NCBI RefSeq assembly: GCF_001194135.2
Contig: NC_068986.1
Location: forward strand, 6,360,358-6,393,786
Source: Octopus bimaculoides
Taxonomy: Eukaryota
DNA: 33,429 nt
Direction: 5' to 3'
How positions within the stretch are numbered: position 1 is the first letter of the stretch; every line of letters begins with the position of its first letter. Position numbers and translations under genes: made by a program. This document shows, in pieces, positions 2,830-33,322 of this stretch. Under the pieces are notes generated by a model. The model searched no databases. It had not been told where the DNA came from and was given only the letters and a program-made list of their open reading frames with translations.

Positions 2830-3238
2830 CAATCGTTTTCAACAAACACTTCTCCATGCTTACAAGGGTTGCATGGAATTTGTTGAAATAAATTTTTCTT
2901 CAGCTGGATGCCTCTCCTGTCACCAACCTCCACCTGTTTCCAAGTTATGTAATCTCTTCCCATGACCAAACATGTTTCCTTGGAAGATGGCATGTTAAGG
3001 ACACCGCTTGCATCATAGTAACACTTGTTTACATCTATGACACGATGTCAAGGCAAAGCAATAATTATATACATGTATACAACAAGCTTTTTTCAGTTTC
3101 TGCCTACTAAATCTATTCACAAGGCTTTGATTGACCCTGGGCTTGAGTAGAAGACATTTTCCCAAGGTGCCATGCAGTAAGACTGAACCCTAAACCATGT
3201 GGTTGAGAAAGAAACATTTTACCACATAGCTGTATCTA
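2830..3238 (-). mobile_element. tRNA-derived SINE with RTE-like 3' tail
   Basis: Minus strand reads ggtaaaatgtttc...ccacatggtttagggttcagtc...gcaccttgggaaaatgtcttctac (B-box-like head and central domain), followed by the tail. Confidence 0.7.
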
Positions 3239-4438: not shown

Positions 4439-5100
4439 ATATTATTCAGTTTTATATCAAGATTTCTTGTCGATAGAGAAAGAGTCAGCCTCTAACCTAA
4501 ATCTAAGGCTCCTTCAATAGAATTTCAACCTCAACAGGGTATTTTTGCATGTTTGTGTGTATGGGTGCTGTGTTTGGAGTCAGTGCATGTGCAGATTTGT
4601 ATGTTTTGTTTTATGCAGACATTCTCATGCATATAGTTGCATATCTAAACATGCACATATATATATTTAAGTACTAAACTTCCGGAAAGTTTTTACTGTT
4701 CAATTGATGACTTAAATCTGTAATCTTCTAATTGACTTTTTTCTTTCTGGTTTTGAGAAGCTGAATTCCTCAAGATCGGTGCTTTAGTACAAAGTCAAGG
4801 ATATGCAACTAAAACACCCTGAAGATGGAGGTCAGATCCATCTAATGTTTAAATGATTTTACTTCTGGTTGCATATCCTTGACCTTGTGTGAACTACATC
4901 TGCTAACATTATGAGGTAATTTCAAACCTCCAGAAATAGCTGTCAGACCTGAAACACCAAACCTTCTCTCTTTAATTTTCTGTCTTTATGCTCTGTTTAA
5001 TTTGTTTTCTTAATATATAAATATCTATATATTTATAAATGAATATTCACCATCCGAATATTTCCAGTCTTTGTTTTCTCTCTATTTATATATTTACATG

Positions 5101-5270
5101 TATATATATATGCATATTTTGTATATCTTGCTCAAGTGGTTTTATTTGTTTATTTGCATCATTATCTCCATGTAGATGAGTATGTATAAGTATGAATGTG
5201 TGTATATATATATGCATATTTTGTATATCTTGCTCAAGTGGTTTTATTTGTTTATTTGCATCATTATCTC
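5101..5270. repeat. 68-bp direct duplication (period 102) abutting an assembly gap
   Basis: 5101-5168 is identical to 5203-5270; the N-run starts at 5271. Confidence 0.85.
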
Positions 5271-5591
5271 NNNNNNNNNNNNNNNNNNNNNNNNNNNNNN
5301 NNNNNNNNNNNNNNNNNNNNNNNNNNNNNNNNNNNNNNNNNNNNNNNNNNNNNNNNNNNNNNNNNNNNNNNNNNNNNNNNNNNNNNNNNNNNNNNNNNNN
5401 NNNNNNNNNNNNNNNNNNNNNNNNNNNNNNNNNNNNNNNNNNNNNNNNNNNNNNNNNNNNNNNNNNNNNNNNNNNNNNNNNNNNNNNNNNNNNNNNNNNN
5501 NNNNNNNNNNNNNNNNNNNNNNNNNNNNNNNNNNNNNNNNNNNNNNNNNNNNNNNNNNNNNNNNNNNNNNNNNNNNNNNNNNNNNNNNNNN

Positions 5592-5757
5592 GAAGCAGAC
5601 AGAAATTACGCACAATCAAACACATAAAAACTAGTGCACATTTACTTATCTTTACATATGAATATATATATATATATATATATATATTCATATGTAAAGA
5701 TAAGTAAATGTGCACTAGTTTTTATGTGTTTGATTGTGCGTAATTTCTGTCTGCTTC
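5592..5757. repeat. Perfect 166-bp palindrome centred on (TA)n, starting at a gap edge
   Basis: gaagcagacagaaatt...ttcatatg...aatttctgtctgcttc; arms are exact reverse complements about 5674/5675. Confidence 0.9.
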
Positions 5758-6570: not shown

Positions 6571-8288
6571 CCAATATATTGCACTTGTAACTTTAAGATC
6601 CAGCCATGTAACACACTAGATACACTGATTCTGAATGAGAATTTCACCAAAGATTTCAGTTGATCAAACAACAGAAGAATACTCTTTGATGAAATTGGCA
6701 GAAATCTATTAGTATTATGCCAGTACTTCTCTCAACTTATTCTTGTAAAGTATATTTGATCAGTCTAAAATTAAAACATTTCATACTCTGGGCATTGTTT
6801 TTAAAGCTATAGACCCCTCAACCATAAAGTGTAAGTGCAATTTGTGTTCCATCAGTAAAGTAAAATGAAGCAAGGAAACGTAAATTATCAAAAGTATCTT
6901 AAATAATTACTATGCAAAGAAATATAATTGTCTGTCCGAAGTTTAGATTGTGGATGTGCCTAAAAGCAATAAACAGCTGTAGCCTATCTTTTTATTATTT
7001 AGGGTGGTGAACTGTCAGGCATCAATGTCTTACACTATCCAGTTTTGTTTTCTCTATGCTCTGAAAGCAGCTCCTGCTAAAGAATACTTTACCTTTCATC
7101 CTTCTATGCATGTTTTTACACAAAACTGAGTTTAAATGTTGAGGAGATTTATTAGCTTAATTTTTTCCCTTCTGTTCACATAATTAAAATGACACTAAAA
7201 AGTTAGATATGACCTGGTTCACTGAAAGCCATAATTCTGAGGTTTCTGAAGTGTAAGTTTTCTGGACGTAACCTGCTTTTATTGTATCCTAGCATCCCAA
7301 GGAGAACACACTGAAATAGTTTCTCCATTGCTTTCTCCATGAAGATAACAAGATGGCAGGAAGACAGAAGATGGCCAAGAATTGTCTGAGACAGTTGTTC
7401 ATCAGAATTGTTCGCCAGAATTGTTCGTCATCTGGAAATCACCCCATGATTGCCTTTCTTTAATCATGATTAAAACCAGGATGTAGGATAGTGCTGCCAT
7501 TGCTATAGAGAAATTTAGAATGCTGAGATGGAATGGAATATGCAACATATTCATCATCATAACCAATGTAAATATAAGCTGTAGTAAATAGATGAGGAAG
7601 TAGAGGGAGAAGCATAAATTAAGGCATTCATGATTTCCCAAAATATATTAGCGATGTACTATAAAAATTCATATATAATCTATCCTTCTTCACCAAAATC
7701 AAGATTAAATTTAGTGTATGTATAATACATGATATTAGGCTATAAATTTGCATTTTACTCCTTCCATGTGTTTTGCAAGTAATAAAGATAAAATAATGTA
7801 ATTTAGTTTTATTATATTTTTAGATTATTTTATAATATATATCAGTGTATTTTATATAAAACAAAATATTAAAAGCTACTGTATTTGATGGCATAAAAGA
7901 CACATGGGCATATTAGACAAACTTCAATTTCAGCAGTGAATATTCAGGAAAAATAAGTTTTTATGTATCAAAGCAGGCAATATTTAAAGCAAATTTGCAT
8001 ATTGGATCCAGGGTGATTTTTGAAACATGTCTTTTGGAAGAAAGCGAATTTTGTATGCCATCTAATACTGTAATCTATTGGATTATGATAGATTGTCAAT
8101 TCTTGTAGGAGTTGTGTAACACTGTGTGTTATAAATAGTATTATAATGTTTGGGTTTTTTTGTTTAGGACTCTGAATTGAGCTGTGTAATATATGTGATG
8201 GTGTGTTATACATGATGAAGTTTTATACATAGTAGCATATTATACACGATAGCATATATTACATGGTAATATATTATGAAAGGACAAG

Positions 8289-8476
8289 ATGGCAAGCTGG
8301 CAGAATCGTTAGCATGCTGGGCAGAATCCTTAGCAGCATTTTGTCTTTCTTTACATTCTGAGTTCAAATTCCACTGAGTTCCACTTTGCCTTTCATCCAT
8401 TCAGGGTTGATAAAATAAGTACCAGTTGATAAGTGCCTTCCCCAAACTTACTGGCCTTGTTCCAAAATTCAAAACC
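8289..8476 (+). mobile_element. SINE (ctggcagaatcgttagc family)
   Basis: gctggcagaatcgttagcatgctgggc...ctgagttcaaattcc...ctttgcctttcatcc...gataaaataagtaccag. Copies at 14791-15003 (-), 15068-15214 and 31103-31270. Confidence 0.8.
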
Positions 8477-12086: not shown

Positions 12087-12747
12087 ATTAGACCCATCGT
12101 CTCCAGCGTAGAAGGACCTCTATTTAAAATATCCTGGTTACTTTCTCACATCCTGAACCCATACTCTCCACCTTTCCGGGACACGTCAAGAACTCCGATG
12201 AAGTCATTAAAAGACTACACCAATTACCCCTAGACCAACTCAGGCAAAACAGATACGCGTTTAGTCTTGACGTTGTCTCAATGTACACAACGGTACCAGC
12301 ACACTCAGCGGTCAACCTATTGACTGACTGCATAATAACGTGCAACACCCAATGCTTCGGACTTACCGCAACTGATATCCACCAACTTTTGTCCATCATC
12401 GTGGACAACACCTACTTCGCTTTCCAAGACCACATATACAAACAGACAACAGGTCTCCCCATGGGATCCAGTCTCTCGGGCCTACTAGCCATCACATATA
12501 TGAACCATCTGGAACGTCGAGCACTCAACATCTGCCGCTCATGCGCCTTCTTCACCAGGTACGTAGATGACATCCTCATAATCACATCCTCCTGTGAAGA
12601 GGCTGATACAATATTCACGACGTTCAATAACATGGACATGAACATAAAGTTCACTATAGAATATCCTGACATCACTGGATCACTATCATTACTTGATTTC
12701 AAATTGAATATAACAGAAGAAGGGGAGATCCACACCGAGTTCTACAG
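12087..12747 (+). pseudogene. Penelope-like reverse transcriptase (one frameshift at ~12162)
   Basis: IRPIVS...SLDVVSMYTTVP...YKQTTGLPMGSSLSGLLA...RYVDDI...IKFTIE...LSLLDF; all PLE RT motifs in order. Confidence 0.9.
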
Positions 12748-12759
12748 NNNNNNNNNNAA

Positions 12760-13230
12760 ATACCCCATTTTAGCGAGAGGATAACTACAGCCATCCAAAG
12801 AGCCATACGAAGAGAAGGGCTAGATATACAACTAGCCCACTCTGGCCCCTCTCTGAGAGGACACATCGCAAAGAAACTAATAAGGGACAACAATCAATGC
12901 ACATTAACAAATTGTCCCATCCGTGACACAGATTTATGCCAACGGGTAAATGTTGTGTATAAAATACAATGTAACAAATGCAATAAGTTCTATGTGGGTA
13001 GCACAACAAGACCGTTACACGTCCGCATCAAAGAACATATGAACACGAGAGCCTCCTCCTTCAGAAAACATCTAGATAGATGCCGGAACGCTGATAAAAG
13101 CATAACAGTCATAATTGAGGCCAATGAAAGAAATTTGGGTAATTTAAAAATCAAGGAAGCTTTACTCATACACAGACTAGGACCCCAAATTAACAACAGG
13201 ATGGAAGTTGGTAATCAATATATTATTTAG
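12760..13230 (+). CDS. Penelope-like linker + GIY-YIG endonuclease (C-terminal part of the ORF)
   Basis: Open frame from the gap to the stop: IPHFSERIT...CTLTNCPIRDTDLCQRVNVVYKIQCNKCNKFYVGSTTRPLHVRIKEH...EALLIHRLGPQINNR. Confidence 0.88.
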   Translation: MPHFSERITTAIQRAIRREGLDIQLAHSGPSLRGHIAKKLIRDNNQCTLTNCPIRDTDLCQRVNVVYKIQCNKCNKFYVGSTTRPLHVRIKEHMNTRASSFRKHLDRCRNADKSITVIIEANERNLGNLKIKEALLIHRLGPQINNRMEVGNQYII

Positions 13231-13650: not shown

Positions 13651-14182
13651 GGACTACAGTTTACCAAGTTACAACAGGTATACAGTCCATTTTTTGTTCT
13701 ATATTGCATTGTTATACCTTCCTAAACTTTTTATTCTTTACAAGCAATACACAATGCTTCAAGCGAACTACAATACTCTCCTATTAAATAGGGTTATAAT
13801 GGGAAGCCTTTGATAAAAGTTTGCCTGATCAGAGTTGACCTGGATTTAAACAACAACAATATTGACAACCAAAGTACATATCACTTTCCAGTTAGTTTGA
13901 TCAATCTCTGAGACATTCCCCATCTATTTTCAGGAAAATTTGACAGAAGTGGTTTGGGGACAAACCAGGTAACCAGCATGTCTTTTGTGCCAAATTATCA
14001 AGTCCCTACTTTTAGCTATTTTTCTTTCTAAACAACTCCATTGGTCAACATTGACAAGTGTAAATCCTGGATGTTCACTCTGTAATTGTACCTTCGCTAC
14101 ATTGGCAAGCTTGATAAAGTCTATACTTTGCTGATGAGGCCATAATAAGACTGGAACATATCCAGAATTATCTCAAGTTTGC

Positions 14183-14531
14183 AGTTTGCTTCCCAATCAC
14201 ATGGTTCTGAGTTCTTCCCCACTTAGATAGGTATCTTCTACTATTGCTTTGGGCTGATCAAAGCCTTGTGTGTGGATTTAATAAGCACAGACTTAAAGAA
14301 GTCTATCATAAGTATGTGTGTGTAGGCAAAACTGTTGATTATGAAACTGATTAACAGTATTGACAAAGTTCATGGTGGTTACTTGGTGTTTGCTGGTGTT
14401 GGTGAAAGGACACATGAGGGTAATACTTTTTGTCATGAAATCATTATGTCTGGTGTCATCAGCTTGAAGAATATGTGTGTGCGTGTGTATGCACGCGCAT
14501 GCTCACATGTTGTGTGTGTGTGTGTGTGTGT

Positions 14532-14562
<31 letters not shown>

Positions 14563-14789
14563 CATGCATGCGTGTGTATCTGTTTTTGTCCCCACCATCA
14601 CTTGTTAACTGGTGCTAGTGTGCTTACATCTTTGTAACTTAGTGGCGCAGCAAAAGAGCCTGATAGAATTAATATGAGGCTTAGAAAGAAAATAAGTACT
14701 GGGGTTGATTAGTTTGACTAAAATTCCTCAATGCAGTGTCTCAGCATGGTCACATCCTAATGACTGAAACAAGTGTAATATAAAAGATA
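14183..14789 (+). mobile_element. tRNA-derived SINE with internal (TG)n tract, interrupted by a gene fragment
   Basis: Head tttgcttcccaatcacatggttctgagttc, central domain, (TG)n, then gtccccaccatcacttg...cagcatggtcacatcctaatgactgaaacaag tail. Confidence 0.8.
14322..14472 (+). pseudogene. ATP5F1B: Fragment of F1-ATP synthase beta subunit gene (end of Walker A + GVGERT motif), degenerate
   Basis: VGKT-(2-bp deletion)[46 protein letters not shown] versus the conserved [51 protein letters not shown]. Confidence 0.9.
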
Positions 14790-14790
14790 T

Positions 14791-15003
14791 TCTTTTCTAG
14801 TCTAGGCACAATGCTTGAAATTTTGGGGGCAGGGGCCAGTCAATTACATCGATTCCAGTACGCAACTGGTACCTAATTTATCAACCTTGAAAGGATGAAA
14901 GACAAAGTCAACTTCAGCAGAATTTGAAATCAGAACGTAAAGAGAGACGAAATACCGCCAAGCGTTTCGCCCGGCGTGCTAACGTTTCTGCCAGCTTACC
15001 GTC
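14791..15003 (-). mobile_element. SINE (ctggcagaatcgttagc family)
   Basis: Reverse complement of the 8289 copy: ggtaagctggcagaaacgttagcacgccgggcgaaacgcttggcggtatttc...; retains many CpGs. Confidence 0.85.
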
Positions 15004-15222
15004 TTATAATATAAAAGGTATTAGTGATTGGTTAATATTGTTTGATTCTCATCAGTTATTGGCACACAAGGTGGTGAACAAGCAGTGTCATTAGAGCATC
15101 AGATAAAATAACTTGTGCAGCATTTATCTGGTACCTTGCATTCTGAGTTCAAATCCTACCAAAGTCAAGTTTGCTATTCATCTTTCTGTAGTTGATAAAT
15201 AAAGTATCAGATCAGTCTAGAG

Positions 15223-16631: not shown

Positions 16632-17895
16632 GGGGTTGGACAAAATAATGGAAACACCTTAAAATTTCAAACAAATTTATTTTAATATGGGGTAGGACTG
16701 CCTTTGGTAGTAATTACTGCTTGAATTCTGTGAGGTATGGACTCATACAAAGTTTGAATTGTTTCCAAAGGAATTTTTGTGCATTCTTCAGCTAAAACAG
16801 TCTCCAGTTCTTGTAGTGATGATGGTGGAGGATATCGACTCCTTATTTGTTTTTCTAAAATGCACCATAAATGTTCAATAATATTGAGATCTGGGGACTG
16901 TGGTATCCAGATAAGATGTTTAACTTCAGTAAAATGTTCCTCATGCCATTCAATAACAACTTTAGCTGTGTGAATTGGTGTATTATCATCCTAAAAGATT
17001 GCGTTTCCCTCCAGAAACAGTTCCGCAACCATAGGATGAATTTGATCAGATAAAATGCTTAAATAGTCTTGACTATTAATTCTGCCATGAACGGAAACCA
17101 TTGGGCTGGCAGATTTCTAAGATATATTTCCCCCCAGATCAGCACAGATCCTTCTCTATGTTTAACAGTTGGAAGAAGGCAGTCTGGGTCAAATGCTGTC
17201 TCTACACGTATACTCGATTGGTGATCAGAAATAAGGTAAAGGATGACTCGTCCAAGAAAATAACATTCTTCCACTGCTCTAGGTACCAATTCTGTATGTT
17301 TTTACTCCACTCTAAACACTCTGCAATGTTTGTTTTTAAAAGTAATGGCTTTCTGATTGCAGCCCTCCCGTGAAATCCGGCTTTGTGCAGCTCCCAGTAA
17401 ACAGTTTTTGCGGTAACTGGGTCCTCGAGGTGGTCATTAAGCTCTGCAGTAATTTTGGGAGCTGTACTTTTGTGATCCTTTCTAGCAATTTGTGTAAGAG
17501 TCCGAAGGTCCCTATCTGAAAGTTTTGGTTTTCTTCTGGAGTTTTGTTTTGATGAGGAGGGTATTCCCTCTTTCTCAAAGGTTGTCATTGTTTTCGAGAC
17601 AGAACTTCTTGATACACCAAACATTTCAATTGTTTTTGTTATGTTAGTGCCTGCCATACGAGCACAAAACAATTTGACCTCTTTGAAAGTCTGATAGTTC
17701 TGTCATTTTAATGAATTTTAATTACCTTTTTCTGATGATATCTGAAAAGAAAAAGCAATTTTATCAAAACATATTAAGCAACACTAATAGTAATTCAAAA
17801 AGCATAAAAATAAACAAGTGTTTGACAGTTTTATAGATATTTCAAAATTATGATGCTTTGATGCTAGGTGTTTCCATTATTTTGTCCAAGCCCTG
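16630..17895 (-). mobile_element. Full-length Tc1-type DNA transposon (1266 bp, DD36E spacing)
   Basis: 29-bp TIRs (2 mismatches) at 16630-16658 and 17867-17895; TA TSDs at 16628-29 and 17896-97. Confidence 0.95.
16682..17706 (-). pseudogene. Tc1-family transposase with stops and frameshifts
   Basis: MTELSDFQRGQIV...GRAAIRKPLL...VIFLDESSF...PTVKH...F*DDNTPIH...SPDLNIIEHLW...SIPHRIQAVITTKGSPTPY*. Confidence 0.93.
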
Positions 17896-19672: not shown

Positions 19673-20397
19673 CAGAGGATTCAGAAAGAGTTGGATGAGT
19701 CTAATGGTGATTATAAAGGTACGGCAGCTTAGAAAACTCACTCTGATCGTTCTGATAAAGAAAGAACCCCTGAATGTGTTGGTGAGATCCCGGCCACGGT
19801 TGACAACAATCCTTCCAAGTCAATCAGGTTTGAGTTTCTTATCAGGCAGGTAGAGCATGAAGTCATTCGGTATTCCTCATACAAGATGAGAAAGGGCCAA
19901 TTTTTATCCCAAGCTATCAAGGACAAGAGGAAAGACCATGCTATGAAGCTTTTTAAACTCAAGCATCCTCACCGACCGAACATGCTTTGGTTTTTCTCAG
20001 ACAAGAAAAATTTCTGCCAGGATCAAATGGTGAACATATACAACACCTGTTGGCTTGCCATGCCTCCAAAACATGTACTGAGAGTGATAAAAATCAAACA
20101 TCCAGTCAACATCATGGTGTTTGGAGTAGTCACTAATGATGGCGACATTGTGCCTCCATTCATCTTCCCACACAGCTTCAGACTCAACACGAAGGCATAC
20201 ATCAAGTGCTTGGAAGAGGTAGTGCTGCCTTGGGTCAAGAGAGTGGCTGCTGGAAGACCCTATGTCTGGCAACATGACTGTGCACCATGCTACACAAGCA
20301 AGAGAACCCAGTCATGGCTGCGACACAATTTCTGTGACCACATCACCCCTAACATCTGGCCACCTCACTCCCCAGACTGTAGCTTGCTTGATTATAT
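19673..20397 (+). pseudogene. DD37D (maT-type) Tc1/mariner transposase fragment
   Basis: WFFSDKKNF...MVFGVVTNDG...WQHDCAPCYTS...IWPPHSPDCSLLDY; 37 residues between the 2nd and 3rd D. Truncated after DY; 5' part in the gap. Confidence 0.9.
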
Positions 20398-22573
20398 ATA
20401 TAACCAAGAGAAATAGCCCATTCATGTTCATAAATTATTTCGTATAAATCAAACTGAGTATGCTTATTTCTTAGTATTTGAACTATTTGAGTTATTTTTT
20501 CAATTTATCCAGTACAACGCTTAAACAAGTAAATAGTATTTTCCTAAACAATAAATCCACTTATTTCAGTCGGTGACTTATTCATGAATATACCAATACT
20601 AGCGCCGCTGAGGGTAATATTCTCTGAGAATGCACAAAAGATTTTTTCAGAGTTATTTACTTTGAATTGTTATTATCTCATATCTGATTAGCCTGTTATT
20701 ACATAACATGCTTCACGGTTTTAGTATACATATCTTATTAGTATTTCCTCCTATGTTCTATATACTCTGAGAATGCATTAAAGCCCTTTCTGGGGCTACT
20801 TTATTTGAATTCTTACTATCAGGTAATTAATTTCCTGTTANNNNNNNNNNNNNNNNNNNNNNNNNNNNNNNNNNNNNNNNNNNNNNNNNNNNNNNNNNNN
20901 NNNNNNNNNNNNNNNNNNNNNNNNNNNNNNNNNNNNNNNNNNNNNNNNNNNNNNNNNNNNNNNNNNNNNNNNNNNNNNNNNNNNNNNNNNNNNNNNNNNN
21001 NNNNNNNNNNNNNNNNNNNNNNNNNNNNNNNNNNNNNNNNNNNNNNNNNNNNNNNNNNNNNNNNNNNNNNNNNNNNNNNNNNNNNNNNNNNNNNNNNNNN
21101 NNNNNNNNNNNNNNNNNNNNNNNNNNNNNNNNNNNNNNNNNNNNNNNNNNNNNNNNNNNNNNNNNNNNNNNNNNNNNNNNNNNNNNNNNNNNNNNNNNNN
21201 NNNNNTATATATATATATATGTATGTATATACCTTACCACTATATCATATACAAATATTGAAAGTTTGTGCTTATACTTACACACACAAACATATATACA
21301 TAGAAATTTATGTCAAACTGCAAATGAAATTAACTTGTCAGTTGTACCCGCTCAACTATAGAGATTGGGCTATTGTTAAACATATTCAACCCAGTATTAA
21401 TGTTGTGATATTGTGATCCAAATCCACTTAGTACTGATGTAGTTTTTCATTTTATAAAAATTAGTAGGTGAGGAGGAGGAAAGGTTTTTTTCTTTATTTT
21501 TTAAATGACTTTGTTGGAGAAGGAAGGGCAGTGCCCACCACCACCTCCAATGTTTTACAGGCATCCAAGAGTGATACAAAGGAGGGAGGGAGATATTTAT
21601 CCTTAGAGCAGTGACCTGACCTAAATGCTAAATGCTTACAACAGAGTCAACATTTCGAAAGGTATTCAATGACCTGGTGGTGATAGTGTTAGATTTAAAC
21701 CATACACTGGATTAAATTGTTGTCATTGTTCAGATTCAGACCAGGTTCAATTGTGTAGAAATATGATCAAAAGCATTCCAACCATGACCATCCTGTCTTT
21801 TTATTTTTTACTAAGTGTACTGTATCACAAAAAGAATTGGTCTCAGTGACCTGACCTAAATGCTAAATGCTAAATGCTAAATGCAGGATACCATCATCAT
21901 AAGATAGCAGAAGATGCTTAGCCATGTACTATGTATGCCCATGAAAAAAACAGTGAGAGCTGCTTTTTTTGAGTAGCAACCAAAGGAGGTGTAGGAGGAG
22001 AAGCAGACCTGTCAGGACCTGACAAATATGGGCCTTAATTAGAAGCAGGCACATGACAGGGCTTGTAATTGTACAAAATGGAGATTTTTTTATCATTCAA
22101 CGTTCCATAGTAGTGGGAGAAATTAAGACTTGAAACACATTTTTCGATGTGTCTTTCCTTTTCTAAGACAGTATAGTATGTTATAATGAAGGTTTGACTG
22201 CCACTTCAAGTCAGTTGAGTAACTACATAACTCTAGTTGGCTCACCCAGGTATCATTAAACTTGAGCTAACATGAAAGCATTTGGACTGTTTCTTGTCAT
22301 ACTAGAAATAGTATGTCAACCACTCCATATATCTAAGTGTTCTACTTTAAAATTTTTTTCATGTAACTCCAATTGTTGCCTTATGTGAAGAGAGTTGATA
22401 GTAGTTGGTAAGCTGAATATTATCTTGTTAGTGTCCTTTATAATCCACCAAAAAGAAAAAAAATAACACAATACAACAGAATTTTAGATGCACTACATTT
22501 GAAACCACCCACTGCAAAAATTCCAAAAAAACTCCAGATGGGAGGGCTATAACTGGCATGCCTTTGATTATAG

Positions 22574-25599: not shown

Positions 25600-25782
25600 T
25601 AGGTGTAGACATGGTTGTGCAGATAGTGTAACAGCTCACTTCACAACCATATGGTTTTGGATTCAGGTCCACTTTGTAACACCTTGGGCAAGTGCCTTTT
25701 AATACAGCTCTTGGCCAACTGATGCCTTGAAAGTAAATTTGGTAAATAGAAATTGTGTGGAAGCTCACTGCATATGAGTGTG

Positions 25783-25823
<41 letters not shown>

Positions 25824-25850
25824 CCTTGTGTTGTGTCTGTCTCCCCATCC
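25600..25850 (+). mobile_element. tRNA-derived SINE with internal (TG)n
   Basis: caaccatatggttttggattcaggtcc...caccttgggcaagtgcc...ggaagctcactgcat(tg)n; same family as 14183. Confidence 0.75.
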
Positions 25851-25924
25851 AACTAAGGATAGACTTTTGTAAAAACAATGCAGGCTATGTACATAGGTGC
25901 TATTAGTTAGGTAAGAATTAGCCA

Positions 25925-27084: not shown

Positions 27085-27260
27085 TAGAGATGAGGAATTA
27101 TGTACATTATTTATATTATTTACATTTGATGGATATTTGTCCTCATCTTGTTTGTTGTTAACACAATGTTTTGGCTGATATACCCTCCAGCCTTCATCAG
27201 GTGTCTTGGGTAAATTTCGAACCTTAATTCTCATTCCTAAGTTATTTTTCGATGTTGTTG

Positions 27261-27341
<81 letters not shown>

Positions 27342-27417: not shown

Positions 27418-27651
27418 GGGTGTATGGCGTTGTGGTTAAGATTCTGAGGTTGATTCCAGGCATTGACCTGAAAAGAATAATAATAATAATAACAACATTG
27501 AAAAATAACTTAGGAATGAGAACACAGGTTCAAAATTTACCCAAGACACCTGATGAAGGCTGGAGGGTATATCAGCCGAAACGTTGTGTTAAGAACAAAC
27601 AAGATGAGGACAAATATCTGTCAAATGTAAATTATGTAAATAATGTATATA
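27418..27651 (+). mobile_element. tRNA-headed SINE with (AAT)n and hammerhead motif (right arm)
   Basis: A box tggcgttgtggttaag, B-box-like gaggttgattcc; ~22-nt deletion in the tRNA part relative to the left arm; otherwise its mirror image. Confidence 0.8.
27545..27590 (+). ncRNA. Minimal type I hammerhead ribozyme (intact core)
   Basis: GACAC-CTGATGA-a-GGCTG gagggtatat CAGCC-GAAA-C-GTT-GTGTT. Helix I GACAC/GTGTT, 5-bp helix II, palindromic ACGT replacing helix III, predicted cut after 27585. Confidence 0.75.
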
Positions 27652-31102: not shown

Positions 31103-31270
31103 GAAGGTGGAAAGCTGGCAGATTCGTTAGTGCATCAGACAAAATTCTTAGTGGTATTTTTTATAGCATTACGTTTTGAGGTCAAATTCCATCAAGGTTG
31201 ACTTTGCCTTTCATCTTTTTGGGGTCAATACAATAAGTACCAATTGAGCCCTGGGGTCAATGTAATCAGT
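31103..31270 (+). mobile_element. SINE (ctggcagaatcgttagc family)
   Basis: ggtggaaagctggcagattcgttagt...gtcaaattcc...ctttgcctttcatc...ggggtcaatgtaatc. Confidence 0.8.
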
Positions 31271-33139: not shown

Positions 33140-33322
33140 CCGTCATATGTGTGTGTGTGTGTCCATAACTTAGTGGTTTGGTAAAAGAGACCAATACAAT
33201 AAGCACCAAGCTTTAAAAAAAAAATTTAGTACTGCAACTGATTCATTCAAATAAACATTCTTCAAGGTGGTGCTCCAGCATGGTCACAATCTAATGACTG
33301 AAACAAGCAAAAGATAAAGATG
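33140..33322 (+). mobile_element. SINE 3' half after (TG)n
   Basis: ataacttagtggtttggtaaaagagacc...ggtggtgctccagcatggtcacaatctaatgactgaaacaagcaaaagataaa; same tail as 14640-14789. Confidence 0.8.

What the first reader, a model, noticed from the sequence alone, without database searches (positions are those of the whole stretch)
14322..14472. ATP synthase beta gene fragment captured inside a SINE (TG)n tract
Seen: ~150 bp encoding [34 protein letters not shown]...GVISLKN, embedded in the microsatellite between the two halves of one SINE. At the left junction the repeat gtgtgt runs into GTA GGC AAA ACT, where the source gene would read GGN GTN GGC (G-V-G), which suggests microhomology. No poly(A) or TSD is visible. 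Inference: a templated insertion (break repair or RT template switch) of a housekeeping sequence into a repeat. Alternatively the SINE subfamily carries this fragment.
Basis: partly seen in the sequence, partly recalled or inferred. Interest (0 to 1): 0.7.

Follow-up and report, generated by a model that had tools for sequence, protein, structure and literature searches.

The report
Dead ATP synthase fragment inside SINE
A decayed 151-base piece of the nuclear gene for mitochondrial ATP synthase beta sits inside the internal TG repeat of one octopus-type SINE copy; it is most likely an old repair patch or reverse-transcription accident with no function, so it is a curiosity rather than a discovery.

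Summary
Window 14322-14472 (+) encodes 51 codons of mitochondrial F1-ATPase beta (ATP5F1B), from VGKT of the P-loop to GVISLK(D/N). The match to solved mitochondrial beta subunits has E=5e-19. It is the only ATP5B piece in the window.

The fragment is a pseudogene. It has a 2-nt deletion at 14336/14337 and at least 13 replacement changes in 113 sites (about 12%).

It lies between the colinear, same-strand 5' half (about 14183-14317) and 3' half (14572-14787) of one SINE copy, inside the (TA/TG)n tract. The same repeat family occurs in Octopus bimaculoides. Another in-window copy joins the halves through (TG)n with no insert.

In 7 other animal genomes the homologous stretch lies wholly inside one 185-nt exon, so RNA and DNA origin cannot be told apart.

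A 10-nt direct repeat (TATGTGTGTG) flanks the insert. It is made of the microsatellite motif, so it is not a provable target-site duplication. There is no poly(A).

The best reading is an old templated patch at a break in the microsatellite. The main rival is a double template switch by a LINE reverse transcriptase.

I could not reach the octopus parent gene, other copies or orthologous sites. The mechanism stays inferred. Interest is low.

The parts
14183..14311 (+). 5' half of one copy of an octopus-type SINE. The aligned part is given; the true 5' end is probably near 14150-14160. It contains a pol III B-box-like GGTTCTGAGTTC.
   Evidence: A probe recalled from memory (positions 27-172) aligns to 14183-14317 at 70%. 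Non-CpG divergence is 0.19. The same probe matches bona fide O. bimaculoides DNA (L012) at 80-93%. tRNA origin is not confirmed by ARAGORN or Rfam.
14312..14321 (+). Short left remnant of the SINE's internal (TA/TG)n tract (GTATGTGTGT). Copy 1 of the 10-nt direct repeat TATGTGTGTG is at 14313-14322.
14322..14472 (+). ATP synthase F1 beta (ATP5F1B) pseudogene fragment. It holds 51 codons, about residues 210-260 of the mammalian precursor, from VGKT of the Walker A loop to GVISLK(D>N). There is a 2-nt deletion at 14336/14337. It has the same orientation as the SINE.
   Evidence: At least 13 replacement changes in 113 sites (0.115 +/- 0.03). The changes include E>K in IMELIN, R>H in GERTREGN and S>L in GGYS.
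14472..14481 (+). Copy 2 of the 10-nt direct repeat TATGTGTGTG, immediately right of the insert.
   Evidence: It looks like a target-site duplication but is made of the microsatellite motif, so it is ambiguous.
14473..14571 (+). Right, long part of the compound TG-rich microsatellite, including (TG)26 at 14511-14562.
14572..14787 (+). 3' half and tail of the same SINE copy.
   Evidence: Probe positions 3-210 align at 73.5%. Non-CpG divergence is 0.17. It is 71% identical to the in-window copy at 33166-33318.

Best explanation
A 151-bp internal stretch of the host's nuclear ATP5F1B coding sequence was copied into the internal (TA/TG)n tract of an already resident SINE copy. It served as a templated 'patch' during end-joining repair of a break in that repeat.

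The template was a fragment of the abundant ATP5B transcript (as cDNA) or of the gene itself; this cannot be resolved. The left join probably used GTGT microhomology between the TG tract and the G-V codons (GGT GTA).

The piece never had a function. It has since decayed neutrally: a frameshift and about 12% replacement-site divergence.

Shown: the identity of the fragment, its decay, its position between colinear SINE halves, and the absence of poly(A).
Inferred: the break, the kind of template, and the use of microhomology.
For: - The fragment is truncated at both ends, internal to the CDS and lacks poly(A).
- Its size of 151 bp falls in the 73-414 bp range (median 191) of experimentally recovered templated insertions. 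Class 2 insertions of that kind lack target-site duplication and poly(A) and show microhomology (PMC5110952).
- The SINE halves are colinear with nothing but repeat between them. Another in-window copy shows the uninterrupted 5' half-(TG)n-3' half join.
- 6 of 7 animal genomes read GGT GTN at the left boundary, so GTGT overlap with the TG tract is plausible.
- The fragment's decay (0.115 +/- 0.03, a minimum) is no greater than that of the SINE (0.17-0.19 +/- 0.03), which allows insertion after the SINE.
Against: - No parent sequence was obtained, so microhomology is unverified.
- The insert has the same orientation as the SINE. A break-repair patch predicts this only half the time, whereas template switching requires it.
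- The 10-nt flanking direct repeat could be a real duplication. That would fit a staggered cut or an RT-mediated event better than simple blunt end joining.
- The ages of insert and SINE are statistically indistinguishable, so co-insertion is not excluded.
Confidence: 0.5

Rival explanations
1. Double template switch during SINE retrotransposition. The LINE reverse transcriptase copied the SINE RNA 3' half and its (UG)n tract. It then jumped to an ATP5B mRNA and copied about 150 nt. It jumped back onto the (UG)n of a SINE RNA through ACAC/GUGU microhomology and finished the 5' half. On this reading the copy was born as a tripartite chimera.
For: - All three parts have the same transcriptional orientation, as required.
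- Bi- and tripartite chimeras made by LINE RT template jumps are documented, including SINE-containing ones (PMC2104539).
- Returning to the repeat slightly 3' of the departure point would explain the duplicated TATGTGTGTG.
- The ages of insert and SINE overlap.
Against: - In described chimeras the newly engaged template is usually copied to its 5' end (PMC2104539). Here the middle piece starts and stops inside a CDS.
- The model needs two jumps that both land in the same short tract.
- No direct repeat of 7 nt or more was found flanking the whole SINE. At about 18% divergence such a repeat could have been erased.
Confidence: 0.25
2. The insert belongs to a SINE subfamily or was propagated from a chimeric master copy, so many copies in the genome carry it.
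For: Not excluded, because no genome-wide search was possible. The fragment is as old as the SINE copy.
Against: - Other copies in the window (25633-25860, 33149-33318, 3066-3230) and in O. bimaculoides locus L012 have no ATP5B sequence.
- A search of 5.8 billion proteins with the fragment found no ORF closer than 77% identity. All hits were genuine ATP5B exons of other animals.
Confidence: 0.06
3. Assembly chimera. The short-read assembler walked through TG repeats and stitched an ATP5B-pseudogene-bearing segment into a SINE.
For: - The scaffold is full of N gaps, many of them at microsatellites.
- The pure (TG)26 at 14511-14562 could hide a false join to a generic '(TG)n + SINE 3' half'.
Against: - The left junction has only about 10 nt of repeat, and the right junction is followed by about 38 nt of complex, non-periodic sequence. 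Both are anchored by unique sequence inside one gap-free contig.
- The fragment is a decayed pseudogene, so it is not contamination from the live gene or from cDNA.
- Even if the (TG)26 join were false, the junction between the SINE 5' half and ATP5B would stand.
Confidence: 0.04
4. This is the relic of a larger ATP5B pseudogene or duplicate gene that was later flanked by two different SINE insertions, each truncated at its microsatellite.
For: None specific.
Against: - No other ATP5B-like segment exists anywhere in the 33-kb window.
- The flanks are complementary halves of one element in the correct order and orientation.
- The fragment ends 20 nt and 12 nt inside the conserved exon and has no intron-like flanks.
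Confidence: 0.02

Closest known systems
Class 2 templated sequence insertions (TSI/TSIP; Onozawa and Aplan, PMC5110952)
   Same: A short internal copy of a transcribed sequence (hundreds of bp or less) inserted at a distant site. There is no poly(A) and no clear target-site duplication, and junction microhomology is possible. The size of 151 bp is within the reported 73-414 bp.
   Different: Those were described in human cells and populations; this one is an ancient, fixed-looking, decayed example in a cephalopod. RNA origin and microhomology are not demonstrable here. The target is the internal microsatellite of a SINE.
Bi- and tripartite chimeric retrogenes made by LINE RT template switching (Buzdin, Gogvadze; PMC2104539)
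   Same: Different RNAs are joined head to tail in one orientation, with a SINE or LINE 3' end as the 3' part. Double jumps are documented.
   Different: In the described chimeras the 5' parts are full-length RNAs and the whole chimera is flanked by 10-20 bp direct repeats. Here the foreign piece is a doubly truncated CDS fragment, both outer parts are the same SINE, and no duplication around the whole element is detectable.
Processed (retro)pseudogene
   Same: A dead copy of a housekeeping coding sequence, with no intron sequence.
   Different: It lacks the mRNA 3' end, the poly(A) tail and a clear target-site duplication. It covers only 51 of about 525 codons.
Filler DNA or organelle DNA capture at double-strand breaks (NUMT-type patches; cited in PMC5110952)
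   Same: Unrelated DNA is used as a patch in end joining.
   Different: The source here is a nuclear gene for a mitochondrial protein, not mitochondrial DNA.
Gene-fragment capture by transposons (Pack-MULEs, Helitrons; from general knowledge)
   Same: A host gene fragment is embedded inside a mobile element.
   Different: Those are DNA transposons that amplify the captured piece. Here there is one non-autonomous retroposon copy and no evidence of amplification.

Membership tests
F1-ATPase beta subunit gene (ATP5F1B; Pfam PF00006) | Significant sequence homology to the nucleotide-binding domain of beta subunits | tested here: met
   PDB phmmer gives 4.9e-19 to mitochondrial beta. tblastn gives 1e-15. 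The Pfam PF00006 match is below Pfam's cut-off (E=4.7e-5, 23.6 bits against 29.5).
F1-ATPase beta subunit gene (ATP5F1B; Pfam PF00006) | Complete, uninterrupted coding sequence with an intact Walker A GGAGVGKT | tested here: not met
   Only 51 codons are present. The loop starts at VGKT. There is a 2-nt deletion at 14336/14337, and conserved residues are changed. It is a fragment, not a gene.
Processed pseudogene (LINE-mediated retrocopy) | 3' end of the mRNA with a poly(A) tail | tested here: not met
   The fragment ends at ..TTG AAG AAT and is followed by TG repeat.
Processed pseudogene (LINE-mediated retrocopy) | Spans exon-exon junctions without introns | not testable with these tools
   The homologous stretch is nt 21-173 of a single 185-nt exon in 7 animal genomes, and in 53-58 of 60 exon ORFs. 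The octopus gene was not retrieved.
Processed pseudogene (LINE-mediated retrocopy) | Target-site duplication flanking the insert | tested here: inconclusive
   A 10-nt direct repeat TATGTGTGTG lies at 14313-14322 and 14472-14481. It is microsatellite motif and could pre-exist.
Class 2 templated sequence insertion | Short insert (tens to hundreds of bp) copied from a distant locus, without poly(A) | tested here: met
   The insert is 151 bp with no poly(A). The reported range is 73-414 bp.
Class 2 templated sequence insertion | Microhomology or non-templated bases at the junctions, judged against the donor | not testable with these tools
   The donor (octopus ATP5B) was not obtained in 3 protein searches, 10 contig look-ups and 1 metagenome scan. 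Indirect support: GGT GTN in 6 of 7 other genomes.
Class 2 templated sequence insertion | Donor locus retained intact elsewhere in the genome | not tested
   No access to the source genome. ATP5B is essential, so retention is expected.
LINE RT template-switch chimera | All parts joined in the same transcriptional orientation, with the 3' part a LINE or SINE 3' end | tested here: met
   SINE 5' half, ATP5B sense strand and SINE 3' half are all on the + strand.
LINE RT template-switch chimera | Whole chimera flanked by a 10-20 bp target-site duplication | tested here: inconclusive
   No shared word of 7 nt or more between 14090-14190 and 14765-14870. The copy is about 18% diverged, so a duplication could be erased.
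Octopus SINE family with internal (TA/TG)n | Both halves present, colinear, separated by the microsatellite; family present in Octopus | tested here: met
   The same probe hits O. bimaculoides GCA_001194135.2 locus L012 at up to 92.7%. The probe itself came from memory, not from a database.
Octopus SINE family with internal (TA/TG)n | tRNA-derived head | tested here: not met
   ARAGORN found 0 genes. Rfam found no tRNA hit even at E<=1. Only a B-box-like motif is visible by eye.

The most novel reading that the evidence does not exclude
The internal (TG)n tract of this very abundant octopus SINE is a recurrent entry point for host mRNA fragments. This could work through reverse-transcriptase template jumping on the repeat or through break-prone Z-DNA. 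Many SINE copies genome-wide would then carry different captured coding pieces. They would form a dispersed archive of germline transcripts that might even preserve A-to-I edited bases as A>G differences from the parent genes.
Probability: 0.08. Interest if true: 0.5.

Novelty: new member of a known kind. Interest (0 to 1): 0.2.

Why it matters
On its own this matters little. It is one dead, non-functional gene fragment.

It is a clean example, in a cephalopod, of a short templated insertion landing in a SINE-internal microsatellite. It also warns annotators that such pieces give strong but spurious ATP synthase hits.

It would gain interest only if a genome-wide survey showed that these microsatellites capture host sequences repeatedly. 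In that case the orthologous-site pattern could separate repair patches from reverse-transcriptase template switching.

Tried and rejected
1. Parent gene, via short exon ORFs. The first protein search with the repaired fragment returned 60 short exon ORFs from other animals. I fetched DNA for ten of them (L001-L011, L014-L016). Nucleotide identity to the fragment was 69-83% and none carried the octopus SINE. The highest values (83%, TARA coral-type scaffolds) reflect similar T-rich codon use: by my own hand count from the alignment, about 34 of 51 third positions match. That is not kinship.

2. Parent gene, via a full-length search. A search with a metazoan consensus, spiked with the pseudogene's S, I and M residues, listed 120 of 8000 candidates and no cephalopod. 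The lophotrochozoan-looking P0157 mRNA is only 74% identical.

3. Exact look-up of the window ORF 14335-14637: not in the collection.

4. Metagenome scan with 27 nt of the fragment: one hit, a bacterial atpD.

5. A real target-site duplication around the insert: rejected as unprovable. The apparent similarity of 14493-14520 to the SINE segment before the repeat (MAFFT) is low-complexity noise.

6. Relative dating of insert against SINE: the estimates overlap and do not discriminate.

7. tRNA origin of the SINE head: no support from ARAGORN or Rfam.

8. A bacterial or organellar source: rejected. Mitochondrial-type beta subunits score best, and the GVISLK motif is of the eukaryotic type.

Full report
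**What is there.** The window is AT-rich eukaryotic DNA with many N gaps and many short interspersed repeats. At 14322-14472 on the + strand the sequence reads GTA GGC AAA ACT GTT (VGKTV). A Leu codon then has lost two bases. One frame over, it reads [46 protein letters not shown].

**Identity of the fragment.** This is the nucleotide-binding core of the ATP synthase F1 beta subunit.
- phmmer against all PDB chains gives 4.9e-19 to a mitochondrial beta subunit and about 1e-18 to bovine F1 beta, residues 209-259 of the precursor.
- Most bacterial and chloroplast beta subunits score 1e-12 to 1e-14; one (5cdf_E) reaches 4e-17.
- Pfam's PF00006 match is below its cut-off (E=4.7e-5, 23.6 bits against 29.5).

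**It is dead.** I compared the fragment with the nearly invariant animal sequence [51 protein letters not shown].
- At least 13 nucleotide changes fall at replacement sites: 13/113 = 0.115 +/- 0.03.
- The changes include E>K, R>H in GERTREGN and S>L.
- The 2-nt deletion breaks the frame.
- Third codon positions are T-rich (26 of 50) and GC is 37%, in keeping with the surrounding genome.

**The host element.**
- A probe for an octopus SINE that I recalled from memory aligns colinearly and on the same strand. Its 5' half (27-172) aligns to 14183-14317 and its 3' half (3-210) to 14572-14787.
- The probe is validated by matches of 80-93% in a bona fide Octopus bimaculoides locus, L012 from GCA_001194135.2.
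- A mariner ORF in the window is 83% identical in DNA to that same locus.
- The genome is therefore octopod-like, although the exact species is not established.
- Between the SINE halves lie 10 nt of TA/TG repeat, the 151-nt fragment, and 99 nt of TG-rich repeat that includes (TG)26.
- Another copy in the window (25633-25860) shows 5' half-(TG)n-start of 3' half with no insert. A third copy (33149-33318) shows (TG)n-3' half.
- The fragment is therefore an insertion into the element's own internal microsatellite, not part of the family consensus.
- The tRNA origin of the head is not confirmed.

**Exon context.**
- The first protein search returned 60 short ORFs. They are single ATP5B exons from many animal genomes, read into the flanking introns.
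- 53 of 60 lose homology just before GLFGG, and all 58 that reach SKV lose it just after.
- At the DNA level, seven distinct genomes show ag|GT CTG TTY ... TCN AAG|gt, an exon of 185 nt.
- The fragment corresponds to nt 21-173 of that exon.
- If octopus shares this ancient exon, which I infer but could not check, the exon-junction test cannot separate an RNA template from a DNA template.

**Junctions.**
- There is no poly(A).
- A 10-nt direct repeat TATGTGTGTG lies at 14313-14322 and 14472-14481. It could be a target-site duplication or the trace of a polymerase re-copying the repeat. A compound TA/TG microsatellite can also contain such a tandem by itself, so it proves nothing.
- On the left, ATP5B homology may begin at 14320 if the parent reads GGT GTA. 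6 of 7 other genomes have GGT GTN there.
- No direct repeat flanks the whole SINE.

**Timing.** SINE non-CpG divergence from the probe is 0.17-0.19 +/- 0.03, probably an overestimate. The fragment's minimum is 0.115 +/- 0.03. The two overlap, so both events are old and their order is open.

**Mechanism.** I favour a templated patch in end-joining repair of a break in the TG tract (0.5).
- Size, double truncation, lack of poly(A) and possible microhomology match class 2 templated sequence insertions (PMC5110952).
- The main rival (0.25) is a double template jump of a LINE reverse transcriptase during retrotransposition of the SINE, as in tripartite chimeric retrogenes (PMC2104539). That model needs the shared orientation seen here. 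It does not usually give a middle piece cut at both ends inside a CDS.
- A subfamily-borne insert (0.06), an assembly chimera (0.04) and a relic of a larger pseudogene (0.02) are unlikely, for the reasons given under rivals.

**What failed.** I could not obtain the octopus ATP5B gene, other genomic copies, or orthologous sites. The attempts were three protein searches, ten contig look-ups, an exact look-up and a metagenome scan. The tools hold no searchable octopus genome.

**Verdict.** The feature is real, correctly described and ordinary in kind: a decayed templated insertion or pseudogene fragment. Its mechanism is inferred rather than shown. Interest is low.

Noticed in passing
window 12281-13230 (+): Remnant of a Penelope-like retroelement: a reverse transcriptase ORF (PF00078, E=1.5e-10) followed by a GIY-YIG endonuclease ORF (PF01541). 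It is interrupted by N runs.
   Followed up: partly
window 17202-17672 (-) and 19886-20416 (+): Tc1/mariner-type transposase remnants (HTH_Tnp_Tc3_2; a weak DDE_3 match, E=0.0026, below Pfam's cut-off). The second is 83% identical in DNA to a copy in O. bimaculoides chromosome CM046625.1, and 74% identical to an ENA contig of an unidentified animal (L013).
   Followed up: partly
window 14863-15005 (-) and 8286-8428 (+); also 8322-8429, 15107-15214, 31140-31247: Copies of at least one other SINE-like family lie directly downstream of the chimeric element (81% inverted match). The region is a cluster of short retroposons.
   Followed up: no
window 5099-5270 and 5592-5757: A perfect 70-nt direct repeat abuts the N gap 5271-5591, and a perfect 83-nt-arm palindrome follows it directly (D9 and I13). 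These are probably gap-closing or assembly artefacts.
   Followed up: no
window 27099-27277 and 27473-27651: A 179-nt inverted repeat, 91% complementary, 195 nt apart, next to long (ATT)n tracts. It could be a MITE-like element or an inverted duplication (I2).
   Followed up: no
L012 18580-18700 and window N runs: In the O. bimaculoides assembly, and in this window, assembly gaps often start inside SINE-internal microsatellites. Structures that depend on long pure repeats, such as (TG)26 at 14511-14562, deserve long-read confirmation.
   Followed up: partly
L001 1014-1200 (GCA_029782515.1 contig JARPSL010077602.1): An intron-containing ATP5B exon of an unidentified animal reads GEQTREGN instead of the otherwise invariant GERTREGN. 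It shares the rare IMSGV motif with the octopus fragment. Its upstream intron ends in a (CA)n-rich tract.
   Followed up: no
window-wide: With the permissive threshold, Rfam reports dozens of 'miRNA' matches (mir-297, mir-3149, mir-466 and others). All lie on TA/TG microsatellites and far below gathering scores, so they are false positives.
   Followed up: yes
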